Virus record (IMG/VR): IMGVR_UViG_3300043411_000942
Location: 62,001 to 126,000 of that record
Direction: 5' to 3' (one strand)
DNA length: 64,000 nucleotides
How positions within the stretch are numbered: the stretch's first letter is position 1; every line of letters begins with the position of its first letter. Of this stretch, positions 17-62,749 are shown piece by piece. The translations under genes were made by a program, and so were the position numbers. The notes beneath the pieces were generated by a model. It was not told where the DNA came from. It did not search any database and was given only the letters and a program-made list of their open reading frames with translations.

Positions 17-277
17 GTGATCTTCGAGCCAGGCTACTACTGGATCAAAGGTCATGGTGTCTGTAAGTACTCCCATGCCACTGGAGGGCTAGCTTACAAC
101 ACTGGGGAGCCTACTCACGTTGTGAACCCCTACCAGTTCGATTCAAACAAATTTGAAGGGAACCTCTACATCGAAACTTCGGACATCACCAGACCAGCGT
201 CTGAAAAAGAAGCCAAGTCGTACAAGGCAGCAGTTCGGAGAAAGCTCACGTCTTCAGGCGTGAAAAGAAAAAACTAG
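17..277 (+). CDS. hypothetical protein
   Basis: 86 aa ORF ending immediately at the first class-1 promoter. Confidence 0.6.
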   Translation: MIFEPGYYWIKGHGVCKYSHATGGLAYNTGEPTHVVNPYQFDSNKFEGNLYIETSDITRPASEKEAKSYKAAVRRKLTSSGVKRKN

Positions 278-305
278 TTAAGGCCGTTACCCCAAAGGAC
301 GTAGG
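277..305 (+). promoter_or_regulatory. class-1 promoter GTTAAG-N17-CGTAGG
   Basis: ATG 313. Other + copies: 1373, 1702, 2020, 3171, 4359, 5196, 6828, 7432, 8996, 10084, 11161, 11834, 12129, 13753, 14059, 15700, 18642, 39895, 45213. Confidence 0.85.
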
Positions 306-312
306 TCTCTAC

Positions 313-426
313 ATGAACTACGATGACTGGAAAGCGACGGACCCCCGAGACACTGACCGCGACTATGACCTCGAAGGAGAGGAAGACCACTTCGAGATCG
401 AAAAAGACTACTCTGGTGAAGACTGA
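313..426 (+). CDS. small acidic protein (37 aa, MNYDDWKATDPRD...), not in ORF track
   Basis: ATG 7 nt after CGTAGG of promoter 277-305; open to TGA 424-426. Confidence 0.6.
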   Translation: MNYDDWKATDPRDTDRDYDLEGEEDHFEIEKDYSGED

Positions 427-530
427 TTCCGTGTGACCGTGTACTCCTGGGATACCCAACAGGTGACGGCTCTGCCTTAGGGAGCGTTAACAACGTCTAT
501 TCAACCAACCCGGCACGGGTGTAGAGTATT

Positions 531-1112
531 GGGTAAGTGCTGACACCTCGGAAAGACGGGGAAATTTCTTAACTCCTACTGGCGAGACACGTTAAGTGTC
601 GGGACACATGTGAACTAGAGTCACAGAACCAACGTAGGAGCTGTAGTCAACCTAGCAAGTCAAAACGTAGACTCCGGAAGGTAGCCAACCCTCTTCGGAC
701 GAGTCAGACCCAAGTAGGATGGCGAAGGGTAAAGCCGAGAGGCGAGCAAAACCCATGCCCCGAATTTGCTGCGGGGCGCTTTTCTTACTTTGAGAGTTGA
801 AATGCACATCCGTGACTGGGTTGCCGTAACCTGAGGGTCTCATCCTTCCTCTAGCCTCGGCAATTCGGAGCACACCCACAGGCCTGATGAACCTGGACGG
901 TTCGGTTCAAACCCGTGTGTAATGGGACACTAGCTCCCACGTCATGTGCTAGGGTTACGGGTGTGCTTTTCAACTTTCCAAGTAACTACAAGCACTTTTC
1001 TTCTTCATAGGTCTGGAAGCCAAGCGGTCTAGTTTGAGGAGACTGATCCTCTCTGTGAACTAGGACGTGGGGTCAACGCACGGGAAAACCTAGCCCTGCT
1101 TCCAGACCTATG
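531..1112 (+). ncRNA. candidate large structured ncRNA (possibly two domains, 534-997 and 1006-1112)
   Basis: No credible ORF. Stems: 535-541/991-997, 573-579/634-640, 712-719/783-790, 795-817/953-975 (23 positions, with G-U), 1006-1020/1098-1112 (15 bp perfect). GAAA/GAGA/UUCG loops. GGTGTA motif at 518-523. Confidence 0.65.
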
Positions 1113-1353
1113 GGGTAGGGGACTTCTTAACTACCGAGGATAAAAATGAGAGATATAGTTGATTGGACCGAAATGACACCAGAAGAGGAGGCGGAGTTGG
1201 CGGACAGAAGAATGAGGACGTGCCAGGCATGCATGGGCTTTGGTGGCCACGGAATCTCCGGCACAGCTCAGTGGTCCGAATGCTCCGCATGTGGCGGTAC
1301 TGGGGCACGACGCTCATCTAAGCACGGGAAAACCTAGCCCTGCTTTCAGACTT
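1078..1353 (+). repeat. 32-nt direct repeat (1078-1109 and 1322-1353, 2 mismatches) flanking a one-gene insert
   Basis: GCACGGGAAAACCTAGCCCTGCTT(C/T)CAGAC(C/T)T read at both positions. Confidence 0.9.
1146..1337 (+). CDS. small DnaJ-type zinc-finger protein
   Basis: CQACMGFGG and CSACGGTG (CxxCxGxG) repeats. Confidence 0.7.
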   Translation: MRDIVDWTEMTPEEEAELADRRMRTCQACMGFGGHGISGTAQWSECSACGGTGARRSSKHGKT

Positions 1354-1372: not shown

Positions 1373-1401
1373 GTTAAAGACACCTCCAAGCCGTACGTAG
1401 G
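1373..1401 (+). promoter_or_regulatory. class-1 promoter
   Basis: GTTAAA-N17-CGTAGG-N7-ATG. Confidence 0.85.
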
Positions 1402-1408
1402 TCTCTAT

Positions 1409-2001: not shown

Positions 2002-2101
2002 CGTAATTGGTAGAGTGAGGTTAACTCGAACCTCACTCATTACGTAGGTCTCTACGGACAACTCAAGTTACGATGAAATTCATTACAAAGGACGAACTAC
2101 G

Positions 2102-10352: not shown

Positions 10353-10425
10353 GGGACCTTAGCTCAGTTGGTAGAGCTGCGGACTTTTAATCCGTAGGTC
10401 GTGGGTTCAAGTCCCACAGGTCCCA
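10353..10425 (+). tRNA. trnK: tRNA-Lys(UUU), CCA not encoded
   Basis: GGGACCT/AGGTCCC acceptor; D arm GCTC-AGTTGGTA-GAGC; anticodon arm GCGGA-CTTTTAA-TCCGT; T arm GTGGG-TTCAAGT-CCCAC. Confidence 0.97.
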
Positions 10426-10580
10426 CTAACTGGATACTGTCTTAGCGAAGGTGTGCACCCTGAGCTATGATCGGACTCCAGCGAGGAGCTACCCGTTCCC
10501 ACGTAGATAGAGTGAGTCGCCCATCCCCCACTGGACTTGTTAAGCCCAACCGGATGGTCAACGACCCACTTAAACGGTAG

Positions 10581-21835: not shown

Positions 21836-21843
21836 ACAATCCC

Positions 21844-22104
21844 CTACGGGTTCGAGGTGATCTTGCTTAACTTTTCTTTCAGCTCTTGAGCAGAAATGTC
21901 GAGTTCGATCAAGCTGCTAAAGAGTGCGAGAACTTCGAGTGTCTTAGAGTGACTCAAAGTAACCTCGTCGAAGGCTGTCTTTGTCGTAACCGCTAGGTGC
22001 TTCCACCTCTCGGTCTCGGATCGCCAGTAGCTAACTTGGGCGCTTTTGTACATGTAGGTCAGCCCGATAGTTACAAGCAAACCAGCGAAAATCAAAACTA
22101 CCAC
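21844..22104 (-). CDS. N-terminal TM protein
   Basis: hydrophobic N-terminus. Confidence 0.55.
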   Translation of the reverse strand: MVVLIFAGLLVTIGLTYMYKSAQVSYWRSETERWKHLAVTTKTAFDEVTLSHSKTLEVLALFSSLIELDISAQELKEKLSKITSNP

Positions 22105-31205: not shown

Positions 31206-31238
31206 AAGAGGCGTAGGTTTTTTTCACCTACGCCTCTT
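31206..31238 (-). terminator. terminator-like hairpin
   Basis: AAGAGGCGTAGGT/ACCTACGCCTCTT stem. Confidence 0.75.
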
Positions 31239-35150: not shown

Positions 35151-36311
35151 CTAAAATCTCGCCTGTTGGGCCAGGTCGATACACAGGCCGTCTATTCTGT
35201 GCAGGTCTGGCTTCTTAGGGAGCTTCGACACCTTAGCCAGCTCGGTTAGCTCCACGTCTTGCTTCGCTGCCCACTCGACAAGCTCGTAATAGTTCCAAGC
35301 CCCTGCTCGAATGCGTAGCAGGTCCTCAGCGTCCGGACGTCGCACAACAACCTTACCTTCAGTGAGGATTTCGCGGCACATTCGTAGGAGTCTCACTAGG
35401 TGCATGGCATGTTTCGTGTCGTACCCAAACTGCTCTTCTAGTTTCGCACGATCTGGATTGCGATTCTTCTTCCAATCTTGAAATTGCTGCCACTCTCGCA
35501 GTTTACTCGTGTAGCGTCGCTCCAAGTCGAGCAACTCAATGAAGTTCGTTGAAAACCCAAGGGAGTTCGCTGCTGCGTTCCAGGTCTTCTCTTCGACGTC
35601 TTTCCAGGACCACTTGGTGATCTCTAGCAGCCTACGGTAGAACTCGTCCTTAATGGATTGCCGGTTGGCTGGACCAAGCTCCTCTAGCTCGTGCCAATTC
35701 CACTCGTCCATGCGCTTATTGATTGTAGCGGAGGCAGCTGCAAGCTGATCTGCCGGGATAAGCGTGTGCTCAGGTAGATTAAACTCTGCTCGTGTTGGAG
35801 GCGCTACAGGAGGAGTCTTAATCCATCTGTAGTGAGTGTTGATTCTCTTGAGTTGTTGAGTCGCATACCCACTGAACGTGTGCTTTGCACGCTGAGAGAG
35901 GAACAGCTCGCGACTCCCCAGGAGGGTTGTCCCCAATGGGGACACGACCAGGTGGTCACTTTCGTCCGTGTAGAGGATCTCAAGAACGTTTGGATTACAC
36001 TCAGCCGCAAGTTTCATGAACTTGCGGAGTTCGAAGATCGTCAAGTCAGGCTCGGACTGAGTGACCTGCTCTACCGTGTTCAAAAACCCTAGGTAGTACT
36101 CACGCGGAGCGATCATGACTCCGCGTAGATCAAGATCGCTTGTAGGGAGGTTCGTCCCATAGGCGTGACTACCGTGACGAGTCAGGTAGATTGTCCGACT
36201 CGGTACCCACGATAAGTTACCTGAATACACGGGCTTCCAATCAAAGAGAAGCGTACTCTTGACTGGGATCAAGTCACTCCTTGGTGTATCCATGGAACCA
36301 CCCTTCTCCAC
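35151..36311 (-). CDS. Pol-beta-superfamily nucleotidyltransferase (Nuc-transf/YcgL-like)
   Basis: HGSHAYGTNLPTSDLDLRGV, NPNVLEIL, YDTKHAMHLVRLL. Confidence 0.9.
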   Translation of the reverse strand: MEKGGSMDTPRSDLIPVKSTLLFDWKPVYSGNLSWVPSRTIYLTRHGSHAYGTNLPTSDLDLRGVMIAPREYYLGFLNTVEQVTQSEPDLTIFELRKFMKLAAECNPNVLEILYTDESDHLVVSPLGTTLLGSRELFLSQRAKHTFSGYATQQLKRINTHYRWIKTPPVAPPTRAEFNLPEHTLIPADQLAAASATINKRMDEWNWHELEELGPANRQSIKDEFYRRLLEITKWSWKDVEEKTWNAAANSLGFSTNFIELLDLERRYTSKLREWQQFQDWKKNRNPDRAKLEEQFGYDTKHAMHLVRLLRMCREILTEGKVVVRRPDAEDLLRIRAGAWNYYELVEWAAKQDVELTELAKVSKLPKKPDLHRIDGLCIDLAQQARF

Positions 36312-39932: not shown

Positions 39933-40676
39933 ATGCGAATTCGAGTAGTGTCTGACCTGCATTGTGAGATGCACAGGGACCGAGGTTGGACCTTGGCCGT
40001 AGAGATTTGCCAAGACCTTGCATTTGACGTCCTAGTTCTTGCTGGGGACATTGCAACGGATGCGACACTAGATCCAGTACTCACAATGTTCTGCGAGCTG
40101 GTTGCACCTAAGCCCGTTCTATTCGTACTAGGAAACCACGAGTACTACGGCGGTTCCGTAGCTGGTACCGAGACAAAAGCTAGAGCGGTAGCGGAAGTGT
40201 TCCCCAACCTTCACGTCTTGGAGGGGGATATCGTAGAACTCCAGGGCCAAAGGTTCCTGGGGTGTACCCTTTGGTACGAGCACCCTAACTGGCTTCCCTC
40301 AGACGCAGACTTCGGGGACTTCAATCACATTGAAGGGTTTGCTGACTTTGTCCACCAGCAAGCAATGGACTCAGCAGACTTCCTTCGGTCCTCGATTCAA
40401 CCTGGTGACGTAGTAATCACACACTTTCTACCTCACCAGGATAGTATCGCACCTAAGTACAGGTTCTCGTCCTCGAATGGGTACTTCCTGCACAACGTGT
40501 CAGACATCGTAAGGTGTGGGGAGGCCAAGCTCTGGATCCACGGTCACACGCATAGCAGCGTAGATTACACGATTAACCAGACTAGGGTAATCTGCAACCC
40601 ATTCGGGTACGCTACAAAACCATACCCAGGAGAGCCAAATCCTGAGTTCAAGTCTCTACTTACAGTGAGGGTTTAG
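39933..40676 (+). CDS. calcineurin-like metallophosphoesterase
   Basis: SDLH, AGDI, GNHEYY, ITHFLP, WIHGHTH. Confidence 0.93.
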   Translation: MRIRVVSDLHCEMHRDRGWTLAVEICQDLAFDVLVLAGDIATDATLDPVLTMFCELVAPKPVLFVLGNHEYYGGSVAGTETKARAVAEVFPNLHVLEGDIVELQGQRFLGCTLWYEHPNWLPSDADFGDFNHIEGFADFVHQQAMDSADFLRSSIQPGDVVITHFLPHQDSIAPKYRFSSSNGYFLHNVSDIVRCGEAKLWIHGHTHSSVDYTINQTRVICNPFGYATKPYPGEPNPEFKSLLTVRV

Positions 40677-42078: not shown

Positions 42079-42112
42079 AGCGCCTAACCTCTAGGGGGTC
42101 TATGGGGAGTAC

Positions 42113-42149
42113 TAGGTTGGACTTGGAGTGTAACTCAAGGTCCAACCTA
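42113..42149. terminator. intergenic hairpin
   Basis: TAGGTTGGAC...GTCCAACCTA. Confidence 0.55.
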
Positions 42150-42191
42150 TGTGGAAAGCAAGCATGTTTTTCCGTGAGGAGGGTCCAGAAG

Positions 42192-42503
42192 TTACATCGG
42201 GGACACTTTGTCATCGCTTTTCAAATCAGCTTGCAGCTTGAGCAGGGCTGCAACAACCTCGTCAAGGTGTTTGAGAGCAAATCCGCTTCCCTGGTCACAC
42301 CAAGAACCTCGCTCAGTTTCTCCTGGTTGAAGGTAATCATGGCGGAAGTGAACTCCATGAGGGGTAGTCTCTATTACGAACCAATCTCGCCACTGCTCCT
42401 CGGGTGGGAGATCGTCATGTACTGTCGTTGTTTCAATGTCCGCAAGAATCGTCACTTGAGTTCTCCTCCTTAGGCTCTTCTTCGTCGGGTAGTAAGAACA
42501 CAC
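42192..42503 (-). CDS. hypothetical protein
   Basis: ORF in - block. Confidence 0.45.
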   Translation of the reverse strand: MCSYYPTKKSLRRRTQVTILADIETTTVHDDLPPEEQWRDWFVIETTPHGVHFRHDYLQPGETERGSWCDQGSGFALKHLDEVVAALLKLQADLKSDDKVSPM

Positions 42504-42647
42504 TCTTACGCATAGAGCCTAACTGGAGGCTGGCTATTAGCTCAAGGTGAGCTTTGGCAAGCTCTTGTACACCAGTAAGGCACTCTGTAAGTACCTTACT
42601 GGTGGCTTCGAGGTAAGCTTTCGCTACTTTGTTACTCTTCTGGTTAC

Positions 42648-43880
42648 TCACGAGATGCCCAAGTATCGCATAGCTACTCGCGTCGTTAGGGGTTCGGAGA
42701 ACTTACTCCCAAGTTCCACCTCAACCTGAGCTTCAAGGGCTTGGGGGTTCAAGGTAGGGTTTGCGAGTAGTTGTTGGCGTGCCACCTGGAGTACTACGTT
42801 TCTCTCTTTCGGGGGAATCGAGTACTTGGCGAACAGCCTCTGTTGGTCAACAGGAGGCTTCTTGAGAGCCTCTACAAGAGCTACACCGTCTGAGGGGGGT
42901 AGCGCAAGAAGAAGCACCCTCAGTCGCTGCTGAGCAGCTCTATCGAGGAATGATAGAGGGGTTCGGATAACCCAACCAAGGTCAAGCAAGTCCAGCAACA
43001 GCTCAGCTTGCTTGTCATTCACATTCCTGCCAAGGGCCGCAGCAAAACCTGGCTCTGCCTCCAACATCTCCTTGATAGCGTCCGACAACCCCAACTGCAC
43101 TAGCAGCTCAACGCTCTTCCTTGGGGCAGGTCCCCCCAGGATATCCCCTACGAGGATTGAGCGCACAGCATCCCACGGCATTTTCTTGAGGCTTGGAGCA
43201 TTCTTTCGAATGCTGGCTACCATGTCCGGAGGAATCTTGAATCCGTACTTCGCTACGAACTTGATTGCACGTAGCATTCGGGTGGGGTCGTCTGAGAAGG
43301 TCTTGTCTGGATTCACCGGGGTCTTGAGCAACCTCTCTTCGAGGTGCTGCTTCCCTAGTCCCGTGAGGTCCAAAACCTCAGCTCGATCTGGACCGTGCTC
43401 AAGATCCAGTAAGCGCCACAACAGCGTGTTGAAGGTGAACTCACGCCGCTTGAGGTCCTCTTCGATGGTCGCAGGTTCCACCATGTGGGGCTTGTAGCCC
43501 TTACCACCCTCTCCGCCATAACTCTCCTTACGAGCGTTGGCAATCTCGATTACCTCGCCCTTTAGGTCATGACCGTCAAGGATCCAAGATTCCGAGATAG
43601 AGAGGATTGCGACCCCGTACTGATTGGTCGTCAGGTTGCATCGAGCGGGAATGAACTCCGAAACCTTCTTGGCAAACCAATCCGAGTCTCGGCCCTTCCC
43701 AGCAGCAACGCTGTCAAATACAACGTCGATGTCCTTGATGGGCTCCTTGAGGATCCAGTTTCGGACTGCCCCGCCTACAACGTAGACGTTCTCTGCAACA
43801 CCCAAGGATCGTGCCACCTTGGACAGGAACTTCATCAGGGCGACAGATCGATCGTGTAGGGAAGATGCGGTAATCATCAT
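42648..43880 (-). CDS. cca: class II tRNA nucleotidyltransferase (CCA-adding / poly(A) polymerase family)
   Basis: YVVGGAVRN, KDIDVV, EDLKRREFTFN, FSDDPTRMLRAIKF; no HD domain; C-terminal RVAMRY. Confidence 0.88.
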   Translation of the reverse strand: MMITASSLHDRSVALMKFLSKVARSLGVAENVYVVGGAVRNWILKEPIKDIDVVFDSVAAGKGRDSDWFAKKVSEFIPARCNLTTNQYGVAILSISESWILDGHDLKGEVIEIANARKESYGGEGGKGYKPHMVEPATIEEDLKRREFTFNTLLWRLLDLEHGPDRAEVLDLTGLGKQHLEERLLKTPVNPDKTFSDDPTRMLRAIKFVAKYGFKIPPDMVASIRKNAPSLKKMPWDAVRSILVGDILGGPAPRKSVELLVQLGLSDAIKEMLEAEPGFAAALGRNVNDKQAELLLDLLDLGWVIRTPLSFLDRAAQQRLRVLLLALPPSDGVALVEALKKPPVDQQRLFAKYSIPPKERNVVLQVARQQLLANPTLNPQALEAQVEVELGSKFSEPLTTRVAMRYLGIS

Positions 43881-44822: not shown

Positions 44823-44871
44823 TGGACACCTCTTTCAAGTCTCCCTACGTAAGTCACGGCTGACGAGTTAA

Positions 44872-45195
44872 CTACTTTTTAGAACCCAGATCAAAACCAA
44901 GCCTCAGTAGATGCAACACGAGCCACTCTGCATCCGCCCATTGGACCTTGGTCTCGATAGCTGTAAGTTGAGGTGCGAGACCAACGCGAAGATCTCCTAC
45001 CTGTAAGTAGTTGTAGCTTCGATCCTCAGAGCGACGGACCACTGCTGAGGCTACGTCCCGCAGGGGAAATGGTTCGTTTGGGGTTAGAAACGACTGGAGG
45101 CTCTTTAGAGCCTGGTCTCGTTCGGGGGAGGGCTCAGACCCTGGGGATCCCTCGGCAGTAAGGGTGGAGATGAGGATTTCTAGTTCTTTACGCAT
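44872..45195 (-). CDS. hypothetical protein
   Basis: GGTGTA-N10-ATG. Confidence 0.55.
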   Translation of the reverse strand: MRKELEILISTLTAEGSPGSEPSPERDQALKSLQSFLTPNEPFPLRDVASAVVRRSEDRSYNYLQVGDLRVGLAPQLTAIETKVQWADAEWLVLHLLRLGFDLGSKK

Positions 45196-48635: not shown

Positions 48636-49312
48636 TCCAGCATCACGCAGCGAGTACTGCCGTTGTGCCCGTGAATCTTCATGAGAGTCTCTAAGTTAGC
48701 GTAGTTCCCAGTGCTTGCGTGCTCGGTCAACCAAGACAGTACGCAAGCACCTGTGGAGAACTGAACGCCCTCTGCGATCACGCCTACCCCACTGATCCCG
48801 CTATGGTCGTGGTCTCTAAGTAGGTAGAACCGCTTAGACTTTGCTTCGGGTAGTGGTGAGATTGTCTGCGGGTAACTGTACCTTTGAACTTGAATTGGAG
48901 CAGAGCCTTCTTCAGGCTTGAACCGCTGGACTACCAGCGTGTTGGCAGACCGCACACCTAAGGACTCGTATATGATACGTTGAGCCAAGTCGGCATCGAA
49001 GTCCTTACAGGAGAATGCATCCAAGGCGAAGTACTTCTGAAGGGGCCAGGCGTGCAAGCTCAAGTGAGAGGTGGAAATCACCTGAACGGTAGAAATCCCC
49101 CCCTCATCCTCGAAGTTACCCGTGAGCTTCACTCTAGCAAGTATCGCAGGGTCTACGGGTACTTCGTAGACCTGAATCTTATCCAGAGCTTGCATACCTA
49201 AGGCTTCGACTATGCTTGCGAATAGTCGAGTTAGGTGTTCCTTCGTGAACACAGCTGAGTCTTCCACTCTAGCGTCCATGATCAAGTGGAGCCCAGCCGA
49301 ATCATTTCCCAT
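48632..49312 (-). CDS. speD: S-adenosylmethionine decarboxylase proenzyme fused to a small phage domain
   Basis: GLHLIMD, ISTSHLSLHAWP, DAFSCKDFD; C-terminal RDHDHSGISGVGVIAEGVQF..HGHNG. Confidence 0.85.
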   Translation of the reverse strand: MGNDSAGLHLIMDARVEDSAVFTKEHLTRLFASIVEALGMQALDKIQVYEVPVDPAILARVKLTGNFEDEGGISTVQVISTSHLSLHAWPLQKYFALDAFSCKDFDADLAQRIIYESLGVRSANTLVVQRFKPEEGSAPIQVQRYSYPQTISPLPEAKSKRFYLLRDHDHSGISGVGVIAEGVQFSTGACVLSWLTEHASTGNYANLETLMKIHGHNGSTRCVMLD

Positions 49313-61451: not shown

Positions 61452-61729
61452 GTATAGGTAAGCTCACTGATGCGCTACCTCTTGCGATCTGGTTACCTCG
61501 TAGTAGCTACGATGTTTACCGGGGGAGCCCATCGGAGATCATCCAAGAACTTACTGGGAACAAGTCTACTTCCATGCGGCAAGCCATCAAGAAGGTCACG
61601 AAAAGTCTTGAGGTGACTCGTCGAGTGAAGCTGGAACTTCCCTGGGGTGAGTCCGATGACGTCCTTGCTACTCTTTTGGTTCACGCTATGCTTCAGTTGA
61701 AAATCAGTCAACCCGTACCATCCGCCTAA
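61439..61729 (+). CDS. hypothetical protein
   Basis: coupled ORF. Confidence 0.55.
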   Translation: MSDLSIGKLTDALPLAIWLPRSSYDVYRGSPSEIIQELTGNKSTSMRQAIKKVTKSLEVTRRVKLELPWGESDDVLATLLVHAMLQLKISQPVPSA

Positions 61730-61737
61730 GAGGCTTC

Positions 61738-61923
61738 ATGAAACTAGTCAATGCGATTGCTCTCTCCGTTGTTTTTCTTGCCTTGGTAGGTTCCTGCGTC
61801 GCAGGCGTCTACCTCAAGGTCCAGGGTAAACTTACTTGGGCTCCCTTTGGGATCTGGATGCTAACCGCAGGGTGCCTGCTTGCCATGGTTGGTTACATGA
61901 TTCGAGGGTTGAACCAAAAGTGA
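61738..61923 (+). CDS. small 2-TM membrane protein
   Basis: two hydrophobic helices. Confidence 0.65.
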   Translation: MKLVNAIALSVVFLALVGSCVAGVYLKVQGKLTWAPFGIWMLTAGCLLAMVGYMIRGLNQK

Positions 61924-61927
61924 TTGT

Positions 61928-61966
61928 TCGGTTGCCTCTACCTCCTAACTTGGTAGAGGCAACCGA
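61928..61966. terminator. hairpin terminator between convergent genes
   Basis: TCGGTTGCCTCTACC/GGTAGAGGCAACCGA. Confidence 0.8.
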
Positions 61967-61972
61967 CAGAGC

Positions 61973-62749
61973 TTAGGTTCGGTTGACGGCAGCTTCGATG
62001 CTAGCTTTGAGTGCTGCAAGGAGGTCTGTCATAGGAGCCTGAGCCTTCACTGGGGTGTCGATAGCAAGACCTTCCTGCTTCTTGGCTACAGCCTCCTTCA
62101 CCCGTTTGGCGTAGTTGTCCTCGTACTTCTGAGGCTCGAAGGTCTTGGTAGCCAGAGCTTCCACGAGCATGCAAGCAACCTTCTCTTCTGCTTCCATCAC
62201 TTGAGCTTTGGCAGCAGGGACCTCCCCGAAGTCTCGCACTTCGTTGGCGTAGAACATTTGGTGCATCACCAGACCACCCTCGTAGGGGCGGACAAGCACC
62301 AAGTGCTCTCGCCCTCGGTTGGACCACTGAGCCACAGCGATCTTGCCTTGCTTCTTCATGACCTGACTAAGCAGGTAGTAAGACTTGTCACCACCCTTGT
62401 TGGGACCCAGGTAGTAGGACTTCTCGACCTGGAAGACGTTGAAGGCTTCTGCGGGGATAAACTCCTTTATCTCCATGCTGTTTGCGTTCTCGCTATCGAG
62501 AACAGACAGCTCTTCCTTGCTGAAGCGAACAAGGGTTCCGCCCTTCTCGACTTCGTAACCTCGCCCACATTCGGAGTACTCCACAGGGGCTCCCGTGATG
62601 GAGTCGGTATACTTCTGCTTCACCTTGTTGCCAGCAGGAGTGACCATGCACAGGCTTACGGTCTCTGCACTTGCAGAGAGGTAGATTTTGACCGGAACGG
62701 AAACCAGCCCGAAGGACAGGGTTGCACTAGCGATGGATCGAATGCTCAT
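61973..62749 (-). CDS. ku: Ku DNA end-binding protein
   Basis: ATLSFGLVSVPVKIY, RGYEVEKG, EKSYYLGP, KSYYLL, HLVLVRP, DLLAALKAS. Confidence 0.95.
   Translation of the reverse strand: MSIRSIASATLSFGLVSVPVKIYLSASAETVSLCMVTPAGNKVKQKYTDSITGAPVEYSECGRGYEVEKGGTLVRFSKEELSVLDSENANSMEIKEFIPAEAFNVFQVEKSYYLGPNKGGDKSYYLLSQVMKKQGKIAVAQWSNRGREHLVLVRPYEGGLVMHQMFYANEVRDFGEVPAAKAQVMEAEEKVACMLVEALATKTFEPQKYEDNYAKRVKEAVAKKQEGLAIDTPVKAQAPMTDLLAALKASIEAAVNRT

What the first reader, a model, noticed from the sequence alone, without database searches (positions are those of the whole stretch)
531..1112. ~580-nt highly structured non-coding RNA candidate
Seen: a 580-nt gap with no credible ORF, starting about 8 nt after a GGTGTA motif. 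It has nested long-range helices (535-541/991-997, 573-579/634-640, 712-719/783-790, a 23-position helix 795-817/953-975 whose irregularities are mostly G-U, and a perfect 15-bp 1006-1020/1098-1112) plus GAAA, GAGA and UUCG loops. G-U wobble on the + strand points to RNA-level selection. Established: phages carry large ncRNAs such as GOLLD and ROOL. Inference: this may be a new or divergent class, or two adjacent RNAs split at the U-tract near 995-1005. I cannot assign a family by eye.
Basis: partly seen in the sequence, partly recalled or inferred. Interest (0 to 1): 0.82.

Follow-up and report, generated by a model that had tools for sequence, protein, structure and literature searches.

The report
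Modular structured RNA stretch, huge phage
A 700-base stretch with no gene in an uncultured huge phage is a conserved, selected set of three separately folding RNA structures inside an early transcript; it belongs to no known RNA family, is found only in a handful of close relatives, and its job is unknown.

Summary
The gene-free gap is real. It spans 427-1145 and is the only + strand ORF-free stretch of 120 nt or more in the first 19.5 kb apart from a tRNA gene and the cut-off end of that stretch. It lies in a + strand transcription unit bracketed by two copies of a 26-copy phage promoter motif. It is under purifying selection: 3.8-6.9% divergence against 9.5-24.6% at third codon positions of flanking genes. 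It is not one 580-nt RNA. Relatives lose or separate the pieces independently: a variable spacer (427-538), domain 1 (539-780), domain 2 (781-990) and hairpin D (992-1126). The "U-tract" is the 5' strand of D's 27-position stem. Structure support is uneven:
- Domain 1 has compensatory changes in small hairpins.
- D has 5 double changes, all from one relative.
- Domain 2 has almost no covariation.
- The two long helices hold 9 G·U and 0 A·C mismatches, which favours the + strand.

No Rfam family matches (GOLLD, ROOL, OLE, RNase P, tmRNA and introns included). No homologue was found outside about six closely related lineages. Function is unknown. My best guess is accessory RNA modules released or stabilised through the long double-stranded stems.

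The parts
277..312 (+). Phage promoter-like motif GTTAA-N18-CGTAGG-N7 ending at the ATG of the 37-aa ORF. Presumed start of the transcription unit (leaderless geometry).
   Evidence: 26 copies in the window against 0.14 expected, oriented with the local genes. The start codon lies about 7 nt after the second box in most copies.
313..426 (+). 37-aa highly acidic ORF, the first cistron of the unit.
   Evidence: Present in all relatives. A paralogue lies 5.9 kb upstream. No family match.
427..538 (+). Spacer segment A: lineage-variable and not notably structured.
   Evidence: Replaced by 9 nt in the L005 and L020 lineages and truncated in L018. MFE z = +1.4.
539..780 (+). Domain 1, a multi-hairpin module. 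Elements: hairpin 546-561; junction stem 573-582/629-640 holding hairpins 586-600 and 609-625; stem 646-654/715-723 capped by a variable hairpin (659-709); 727-730/751-754 with a GAGA hairpin 734-743; hairpin 757-777.
   Evidence: Compensatory changes at 609/625 (UA<->CG), 611/623 (UA->GC) and 660/708 (UA<->GC). A 9-nt insertion lengthens hairpin 609-625 in L002 and L009. The variable hairpin is swapped for another hairpin. Block 720-800 is almost invariant. Absent in L017, L018 and L019. MFE z is only -1.5.
781..990 (+). Domain 2: a 33-position basal helix 785-817/953-985 capped by a branched tip whose inner fold is ambiguous.
   Evidence: z = -5.35. 27 WC, 4 G·U, 0 A·C. Present without domain 1 in L018 and L019. 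Covariation is weak: 2 double changes, reached by 40 of 500 shuffles. No other copy in the window or loci.
992..1126 (+). Hairpin D: a 27-position basal stem 994-1020/1098-1124 (perfect 15-bp core 1006-1020/1098-1112) with a Y-shaped tip.
   Evidence: z = -4.1 on + (-58.7 kcal/mol) against -45.6 kcal/mol on -. 20 WC, 5 G·U, 0 A·C. 5 pairs changed on both sides, reached by 1 of 500 shuffles, all from L002, whose different flanks are again complementary. Its 3' half is kept even in L017.
1146..1337 (+). 63-aa ORF with two CxxCxGxG motifs. It has a GAGGA Shine-Dalgarno but no promoter motif of its own, so it is presumably read from the same transcript.
   Evidence: Absent in L002.
1317..1351 (+). 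D': a 35-nt direct repeat of the 3' part of hairpin D (1073-1107), overlapping the stop of the 63-aa ORF.
   Evidence: 91% identity. Weak match to the D model.
1373..1408 (+). Next copy of the promoter motif. It marks the end of the unit and the start of the 80-aa gene.

Best explanation
The gap is a string of independently folding RNA structure modules: domain 1, domain 2 and hairpin D, plus a dispensable spacer. They lie between the two cistrons of a + strand early transcription unit of an uncultured huge phage.

SHOWN
- The stretch is non-coding.
- It evolves as slowly as codon positions 1 and 2 of its neighbours.
- It sits between two promoter motifs that point the same way.
- Its modules are gained, lost and separated independently among close relatives.
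- Several hairpins keep pairing through double substitutions and indels.
- The two long helices tolerate G·U but not A·C.

INFERRED
- The modules act as RNA.
- The two long stems (33 and 27 stacked positions) are double-strand-specific processing or stability elements of the RNase III kind. They would cut the transcript between cistrons and release or protect a stable structured RNA.
- The near-invariant core (about 720-800 and much of domain 2) is held fixed because it binds a phage or host factor.
- Whole modules are missing in viable-looking relatives, so the function is accessory, as expected in a hyperplastic early region. It is not essential.
For: - Non-coding: stops of all three kinds occur in all six frames. 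Indels of 1, 2, 8 and 9 nt occur among relatives. ORF pieces have no Pfam or PHROG match and no paralogue.
- Constraint: the modules diverge 3.8-6.9%, third codon positions 9.5-24.6% and positions 1+2 3.4-7.8%. Fisher p ranges from 0.029 to 1e-15 in five lineages.
- Transcription: promoter motifs at 277-305 and 1373-1401 with none between them, and a 63-aa ORF with only a Shine-Dalgarno.
- Uniqueness: it is the only large + strand ORF-free stretch in 19.5 kb besides a tRNA gene.
- Modularity.
- Structure: 4 pairs changed on both sides on the + strand structure, reached by 0 of 500 shuffles. The minus-strand structure has 2, reached by 97 of 500. D has 5 double changes, reached by 1 of 500. Hairpin variants preserve their structure.
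- Strand: 9 G·U against 0 A·C in 60 register-fixed positions. D is 13 kcal/mol more stable on +. Consensus-fold energy is -154.7 on + against -135.7 on -.
Against: - Only about six closely related lineages (89-95% identity) exist, so covariation is thin. Domain 2 has essentially none, and D's five double changes come from one relative and may be one event.
- The MFE z-score is only about 2.4 sd beyond this genome's own background, and domain 1 alone is unremarkable.
- The minus strand folds almost as well overall and for domain 2.
- There are no expression data, and RNA ends and RNase III cleavage are untested.
- Mosaic recombination among these phages could inflate the apparent conservation.
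- No partner protein was identified.
Confidence: 0.55

Rival explanations
1. One large (~580 nt) ornate ncRNA of the GOLLD/ROOL kind, folded as a single unit closed by a long-range helix.
For: A high overall fold z-score. Nested helices exist in the window sequence. Such RNAs are phage-associated (PMC12286853).
Against: - The closing helix 535-541/991-997 is not conserved.
- The modules occur separately (L018 and L019 carry domain 2 and D only), and a gene sits between domain 2 and D in L002.
- No Rfam match at E up to 10, whether searched whole or in pieces.
Confidence: 0.08
2. DNA-level elements: palindromes that serve as recombination joints for gene-cassette exchange (as PeSL cassettes do in T4-type phages), or as a replication or packaging signal, with no RNA function.
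For: - Indel junctions fall at or next to the long palindromes. A gene is inserted just 5' of D in L002, and a gene flanked by D and the partial repeat D' sits 3' of it.
- The minus strand folds nearly as well.
- PeSL-mediated shuffling is documented (PMC2839356, PMC4122927).
Against: - 9 G·U and 0 A·C mismatches in the long helices; on DNA both are mismatches and should be equally frequent.
- There is strong primary-sequence constraint across unpaired and branched parts, not only the palindromes.
- Each module is single-copy in the window and, by k-mer, in each of the two IMG/VR contigs.
- No iterons and no AT-rich segment.
Confidence: 0.17
3. Purely cis-acting untranslated region: a long structured 3' UTR or intercistronic spacer that only tunes the stability or translation of the 37-aa and 63-aa cistrons.
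For: It lies inside a bicistronic unit. Long stems are typical nuclease barriers or processing sites.
Against: - L017 keeps both flanking cistrons with nearly the whole element deleted, and L002 keeps the element without the 63-aa gene.
- Near-invariance of about 80 nt of branched sequence is more than stability hairpins need.
Confidence: 0.15
4. Decaying remnant of former genes or a mobile non-coding element (MITE-like), with no function.
For: Presence/absence polymorphism. Domain 2 and D are bounded by long inverted repeats.
Against: - Divergence is 2 to 5 times lower than at synonymous-like positions.
- No similarity of any reading-frame piece to any protein family or to other parts of the loci.
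- Single copy, with no other copies found by covariance models.
- No match in the phage, plasmid, metagenome or genome collections.
Confidence: 0.05

Closest known systems
GOLLD, ROOL and OLE large ornate RNAs (Rfam RF01998, RF03087, RF01071; PMC12286853)
   Same: Several hundred nucleotides of branched, conserved non-coding sequence. Phage-associated in the case of GOLLD and ROOL. Function unknown.
   Different: No sequence or structure match. This stretch is three separable modules rather than one closed fold. It is embedded between cistrons. It is known from only about six near-identical lineages.
RNase III processing hairpins between genes of phage T7 early mRNA (from my own knowledge; not looked up here)
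   Same: Long imperfect double-stranded stems between cistrons of an early polycistronic transcript. The stems are 27-33 stacked positions, long enough for RNase III.
   Different: T7 sites are simple hairpins of about 60 nt. Here the stems carry branched, sequence-invariant tips and are accompanied by a 240-nt multi-hairpin domain. Cleavage is untested.
PeSL promoter/stem-loop cassettes of T4-type phages (PMC2839356, PMC4122927)
   Same: A hyperplastic early region of small genes, each with its own conserved promoter. Repeated stem-loop sequence (D and D') flanks an optional gene. Indels between relatives fall at these elements.
   Different: PeSLs are short, many-copy promoter-terminator units. 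Domains 1 and 2 are long, single-copy and not promoter-linked, and D lacks a U-tail terminator.
Modular 3' UTR structures of flaviviruses (xrRNA and dumbbell elements; from my own knowledge)
   Same: A tandem series of independently folding RNA modules whose number differs between close lineages.
   Different: Unrelated sequence and host. No evidence of exonuclease stalling here. The only Rfam hint (Flavi_CRE, 13.9 bits against a threshold of 42) is noise.

Membership tests
GOLLD / ROOL / OLE / HEARO (Rfam) | Match to the family covariance model at or near the gathering score | tested here: not met
   cmscan at gathering score on the whole window, and at E up to 10 on 300-1500, 535-795 and 780-1125. 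No hit to any of them.
RNase P RNA / tmRNA / tRNA-like | Covariance-model or ARAGORN match | tested here: not met
   The only tRNA is tRNA-Lys at 10353-10426 and there is no tmRNA. Nothing in the gap.
Group I / group II intron | Match to the Rfam intron models, and interruption of a host gene whose exons join in frame | tested here: not met
   No Rfam hit. The flanking ORFs are complete and separate genes. L017 lacks the element without fusing them into one conserved protein. No homing endonuclease in the L002 insert.
Known self-cleaving ribozymes (hammerhead, twister, and others) | Covariance-model match | tested here: not met
   A CUGAUGA word occurs in a loop at 884-890, but no ribozyme model matches at E up to 10.
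Intrinsic terminator | G+C-rich stem directly followed by a U-run | tested here: not met
   Hairpin D is followed by GGGGUAGGGG, and the scan finds no terminator there. A canonical bidirectional terminator exists elsewhere at 31206-31238.
RNase III-type processing site | About 20 bp or more of mostly continuous double-stranded RNA | tested here: met
   785-817/953-985 (31 of 33 paired, counting G·U) and 994-1020/1098-1124 (25 of 27 paired).
RNase III-type processing site | Cleavage by RNase III in vivo or in vitro | not testable with these tools
   No expression or cleavage data are available.
MITE-like / dispersed repeat | Multiple copies per genome with terminal inverted repeats and target-site duplications | tested here: not met
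   The covariance models for D and domain 2 find no other copy in the 64-kb window or the loci. K-mers hit one place per IMG/VR contig. Self-BLAST finds only D'.
PeSL-like regulatory cassette | Short conserved promoter plus stem-loop unit, repeated many times and bounding the indels between relatives | tested here: inconclusive
   The promoter motif is repeated 26 times, and D/D' bound an optional gene. However, D itself is not repeated elsewhere and carries no promoter.
Protein-coding gene with recoded stop, or pseudogene | An open frame after reassigning one stop, or residual similarity of the pieces to proteins | tested here: not met
   All frames carry all three stop codons. The pieces were searched separately and gave no family and no paralogue.

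The most novel reading that the evidence does not exclude
A previously undescribed class of accessory phage non-coding RNA: separately exchangeable structured modules carried in the early region of huge phages. They would be cut out of a leaderless mRNA and act in trans, for example as a decoy or sponge for a host defence or RNA-processing factor.
Probability: 0.25. Interest if true: 0.75.

Novelty: new member of a known kind. Interest (0 to 1): 0.5.

Why it matters
Most of the gene content of huge uncultured phages is unknown, and very few phage non-coding RNAs have a known role. This stretch of about 600 nt is clearly selected, matches no family, and occurs naturally in variant forms: domain 1 missing, nearly everything missing, or a gene inserted between modules. 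Those variants amount to ready-made deletion mutants for asking what each module does. The value is limited by the very narrow distribution, the thin covariation and the lack of a cultured host.

Tried and rejected
- Rfam at gathering score and at E up to 10, whole and in pieces: nothing.
- BLAST of the region against INPHARED phages (near and distant modes) and PLSDB plasmids: no match.
- Exact-word scans.
  - IMG/VR found only the source contig and one relative, plus chance 17-mers.
  - Metagenome and GTDB genome collections gave nothing with a 20-mer and only chance hits with an 18-mer.
- Remote homologues of the upstream 86-aa protein (44-49% identity, L052 and L053): neither module is present there, and L052's own 920-nt gap is unrelated.
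- Stop-codon reassignment, pseudogene and small-ORF readings: rejected.
- Counting wobble substitutions as strand evidence: rejected after the minus-strand control gave the same count on a different structure.
- 240-nt tiling z-scores: uninformative for this region because the tiles cut the long helices.
- The ACGTAGG at 632-638, preceded by GTGAA at the right spacing, as an internal promoter: rejected because the 9-nt insertion in L002 and L009 destroys the spacing.
- Domain 2 and D as paralogues: the D model does not hit domain 2.

Full report
**Where the window comes from**

The window is part of IMG/VR contig IMGVR_UViG_3300043411_000942 (233 kb). A relative, IMGVR_UViG_3300020049_006032 (380 kb), is 94-98% identical nearby. 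No isolate phage in INPHARED resembles it. The few recognisable proteins in the window are:
- a CCA-adding/poly(A) polymerase-type enzyme;
- RlaP;
- Ku;
- an ADP-ribosylglycohydrolase;
- a metallophosphatase;
- a GmrSD_N/ParB-like protein;
- an ArsR-type regulator.

**The observation**

The region between the 37-aa ORF (313-426) and the 63-aa ORF (1146-1337) has no credible ORF.
- Every frame on both strands carries TAA, TAG and TGA, so no single stop reassignment opens it.
- On the + strand of the first 19.5 kb, which is packed with small genes, stretches of 120 nt or more without an ORF of 35 aa or more are 437-1145, the tRNA-Lys gene and the cut-off end of that stretch.
- Doing so found no Pfam or PHROG family and no paralogue elsewhere in the window or in related loci.

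The thermodynamic argument is weaker than it looks.
- Region 531-1112 gives z -4.7 on + and -4.4 on -.
- Forty-four other 582-nt tiles of the same window average -1.6 (sd 1.4), and one is lower than the target.
- Split by module, domain 1 has z -1.5, domain 2 has z -5.35, hairpin D has z -4.1 and the 5' spacer has z +1.4.

**Relatives and modularity**

Homologues of the upstream 86-aa protein led to 22 further contigs from Logan, ENA and NCBI assemblies, falling into about six lineages at 89-95% identity. They differ by clean presence or absence of pieces.
- Positions 427-538 are replaced by 9 nt in the L005 and L020 lineages.
- Positions 450-791 (spacer and domain 1) are missing in L018 and L019, which keep domain 2 and D.
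- Positions 415-1061 are missing in L017.
- In L002 a 182-aa gene sits between 985 and 994, exactly between the last pair of domain 2 and the first pair of D.
- The 63-aa gene is absent from L002. In the window it is flanked by D and a 35-nt repeat of D's 3' part.

The stretch is therefore a series of separable units, not one closed RNA. The helix 535-541/991-997 that would close it is not conserved.

**Constraint**

The three modules differ from the window by 3.8-6.9% in five lineages. Third codon positions of six flanking genes differ by 9.5-24.6%, and positions 1+2 by 3.4-7.8% (Fisher p from 0.029 to 1e-15). The non-coding sequence is thus as constrained as amino-acid-determining positions. 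That excludes a neutral spacer or a decaying pseudogene, unless recombination has repeatedly homogenised just this stretch.

**Transcription**

A bipartite motif, GTTAA-N17/18-CGTAGG, occurs 26 times against 0.14 expected. It is on the + strand in 1-19 kb and at 39.9 kb, and on the - strand in 21-45 kb. In most copies an ATG follows about 7 nt after the second box. That spacing has sigma-70-like geometry and implies leaderless mRNAs. The CGT-containing second box recalls ECF-type promoters; this is my own recollection and was not tested. Copies at 277-305 and 1373-1401 bracket the unit made of the 37-aa ORF, the gap and the 63-aa ORF. The 63-aa ORF has only a GAGGA Shine-Dalgarno. The gap should therefore be transcribed on the + strand as the middle of a bicistronic RNA.

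**Structure evidence and its limits**

On eight to ten distinct sequences, RNAalifold gives 127-128 pairs for 539-1000.

- *Domain 1.* Compensatory changes occur at 609/625, 611/623 and 660/708. A 9-nt insertion lengthens hairpin 609-625 from 5 to 11 pairs. The hairpin at 659-709 is replaced by a different hairpin.
- *Whole structure.* Four pairs are changed on both sides on the + strand structure, reached by 0 of 500 shuffles. The minus strand's own structure has 2, reached by 97 of 500.
- *A control that matters.* The 15 Watson-Crick to wobble sites on + are matched by 16 on a quite different minus-strand structure. With so little diversity that count proves nothing.
- *Domain 2.* Alone it has almost no covariation: 2 double changes, both at the L018 junction, reached by 40 of 500 shuffles. 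Its inner branches are ambiguous between two folds.
L002 has different flanks that are again perfectly complementary (27 bp). This gives 5 double changes, reached by 1 of 500 shuffles, but all come from that one lineage.

**Strand**

Counting without any folding program, the two long helices (60 stacked positions, register fixed) contain 47 Watson-Crick pairs, 9 G·U, 0 A·C and 4 other mismatches.
- On DNA or on the minus strand, G·U and A·C would be equivalent. A 9:0 split favours + strand RNA (my sign-test estimate, about 0.004 two-sided).
- D is 13 kcal/mol more stable on +.
- The consensus-fold energy is -154.7 on + against -135.7 on -.
- Domain 2 folds equally well on both strands.

**Known families**

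No Rfam 15 family reaches its threshold in the window except tRNA. With permissive thresholds on the whole gap or its pieces, only noise of 9-16 bits appears. GOLLD, ROOL, OLE, HEARO, RNase P, tmRNA, introns and the ribozymes are therefore not met.

Covariance models built for D and domain 2 find no further copies in the window or in any locus held. They score 150-260 bits on + against 20-45 on -. They also find nothing in the two more distant relatives reached through remote protein homology. Word scans of IMG/VR, JGI metagenome contigs and GTDB genomes found only the two IMG/VR contigs and chance hits. The element is restricted to one small clade as far as these tools can see.

**Interpretation**

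What is shown is a constrained, non-coding, modular stretch inside a + strand early unit, with partial evidence for conserved pairing.

What I infer is that the modules work as RNA.
- The two long stems are of the length used by double-strand-specific nucleases. I propose that they process or protect the transcript and release or stabilise a structured RNA whose invariant core binds some factor.
- Relatives lacking modules keep both flanking genes, and L002 keeps the modules without the 63-aa gene. The function is therefore accessory and not simply a leader or trailer of those genes.

The main rival is a DNA-level role of the palindromes as recombination joints, like PeSL cassettes (PMC2839356, PMC4122927). 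Such a role may well coexist with an RNA function, because the indel junctions cluster at them.

**Verdict**

The feature is real. It is probably a new family of structured phage RNA elements. Its function is unknown.

Noticed in passing
window, 26 sites, e.g. 277-305, 1373-1401, 2020-2048 (+); 21843-21871, 44844-44872 (-): Bipartite promoter-like motif GTTAA-N17/18-CGTAGG (26 copies against 0.14 expected), oriented with the genes. In most copies the ATG follows about 7 nt after the second box, which implies leaderless mRNAs and a phage-specific or alternative sigma factor.
   Followed up: partly
window 10353-10426 (+): tRNA-Lys (anticodon UUU). Apart from the gap, it is the only internal + strand ORF-free stretch in the first 19.5 kb. 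The same tRNA is present in L002.
   Followed up: no
window 31206-31238: Perfect 13-bp G+C-rich hairpin with a T-rich loop (TTTTTTC), flanked by A/T-rich sequence on both sides, between convergent genes. It looks like a canonical bidirectional intrinsic terminator, and it was the most extreme 240-nt fold tile (z -7.8).
   Followed up: partly
window 1146-1337 (+): The 63-aa ORF carries two CxxCxGxG motifs (the DnaJ-type zinc-finger pattern). It is optional among relatives and is flanked by hairpin D and a 35-nt repeat of D (1317-1351).
   Followed up: partly
L002 7462-7700 (+): Where the window has the 63-aa gene, L002 has a promoter motif, an 11-codon ORF, about 190 nt of non-coding sequence and a canonical terminator hairpin with a U-run. 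This may be a small RNA gene. No Rfam match; fold z -2.5.
   Followed up: partly
window 810-831 and 953-960: GGUUACGG (953-960) can pair either with CCGUGACU (810-817) or with the near-repeat CCGUAACC (824-831). These are two mutually exclusive conserved pairings inside domain 2, so a conformational switch is possible.
   Followed up: no
L001 968-1095 (5.9 kb upstream of window position 1): A paralogue (70% nucleotide identity) of the 37-aa acidic ORF, followed directly by a 162-aa ORF and not by a structured gap.
   Followed up: no
window 35151-36311 (-), 42648-43880 (-), 39933-40676 (+), 61973-62749 (-): RlaP (RNA-repair-associated nucleotidyltransferase), a CCA-adding/poly(A) polymerase-type enzyme, a metallophosphatase and a Ku homologue. 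Together they suggest an RNA/DNA repair gene set in this phage.
   Followed up: no
window 42101-42682, 48961-49200, 61701-62282: Other tiles with strongly negative fold z-scores (-5.3, -5.2, -4.0), mostly inside coding regions. Not examined.
   Followed up: no
window 779-790 and 992-1003: Both long hairpins begin with nearly the same word, GC(G/A)CUUUUCUU. The covariance model of D does not otherwise match domain 2.
   Followed up: partly
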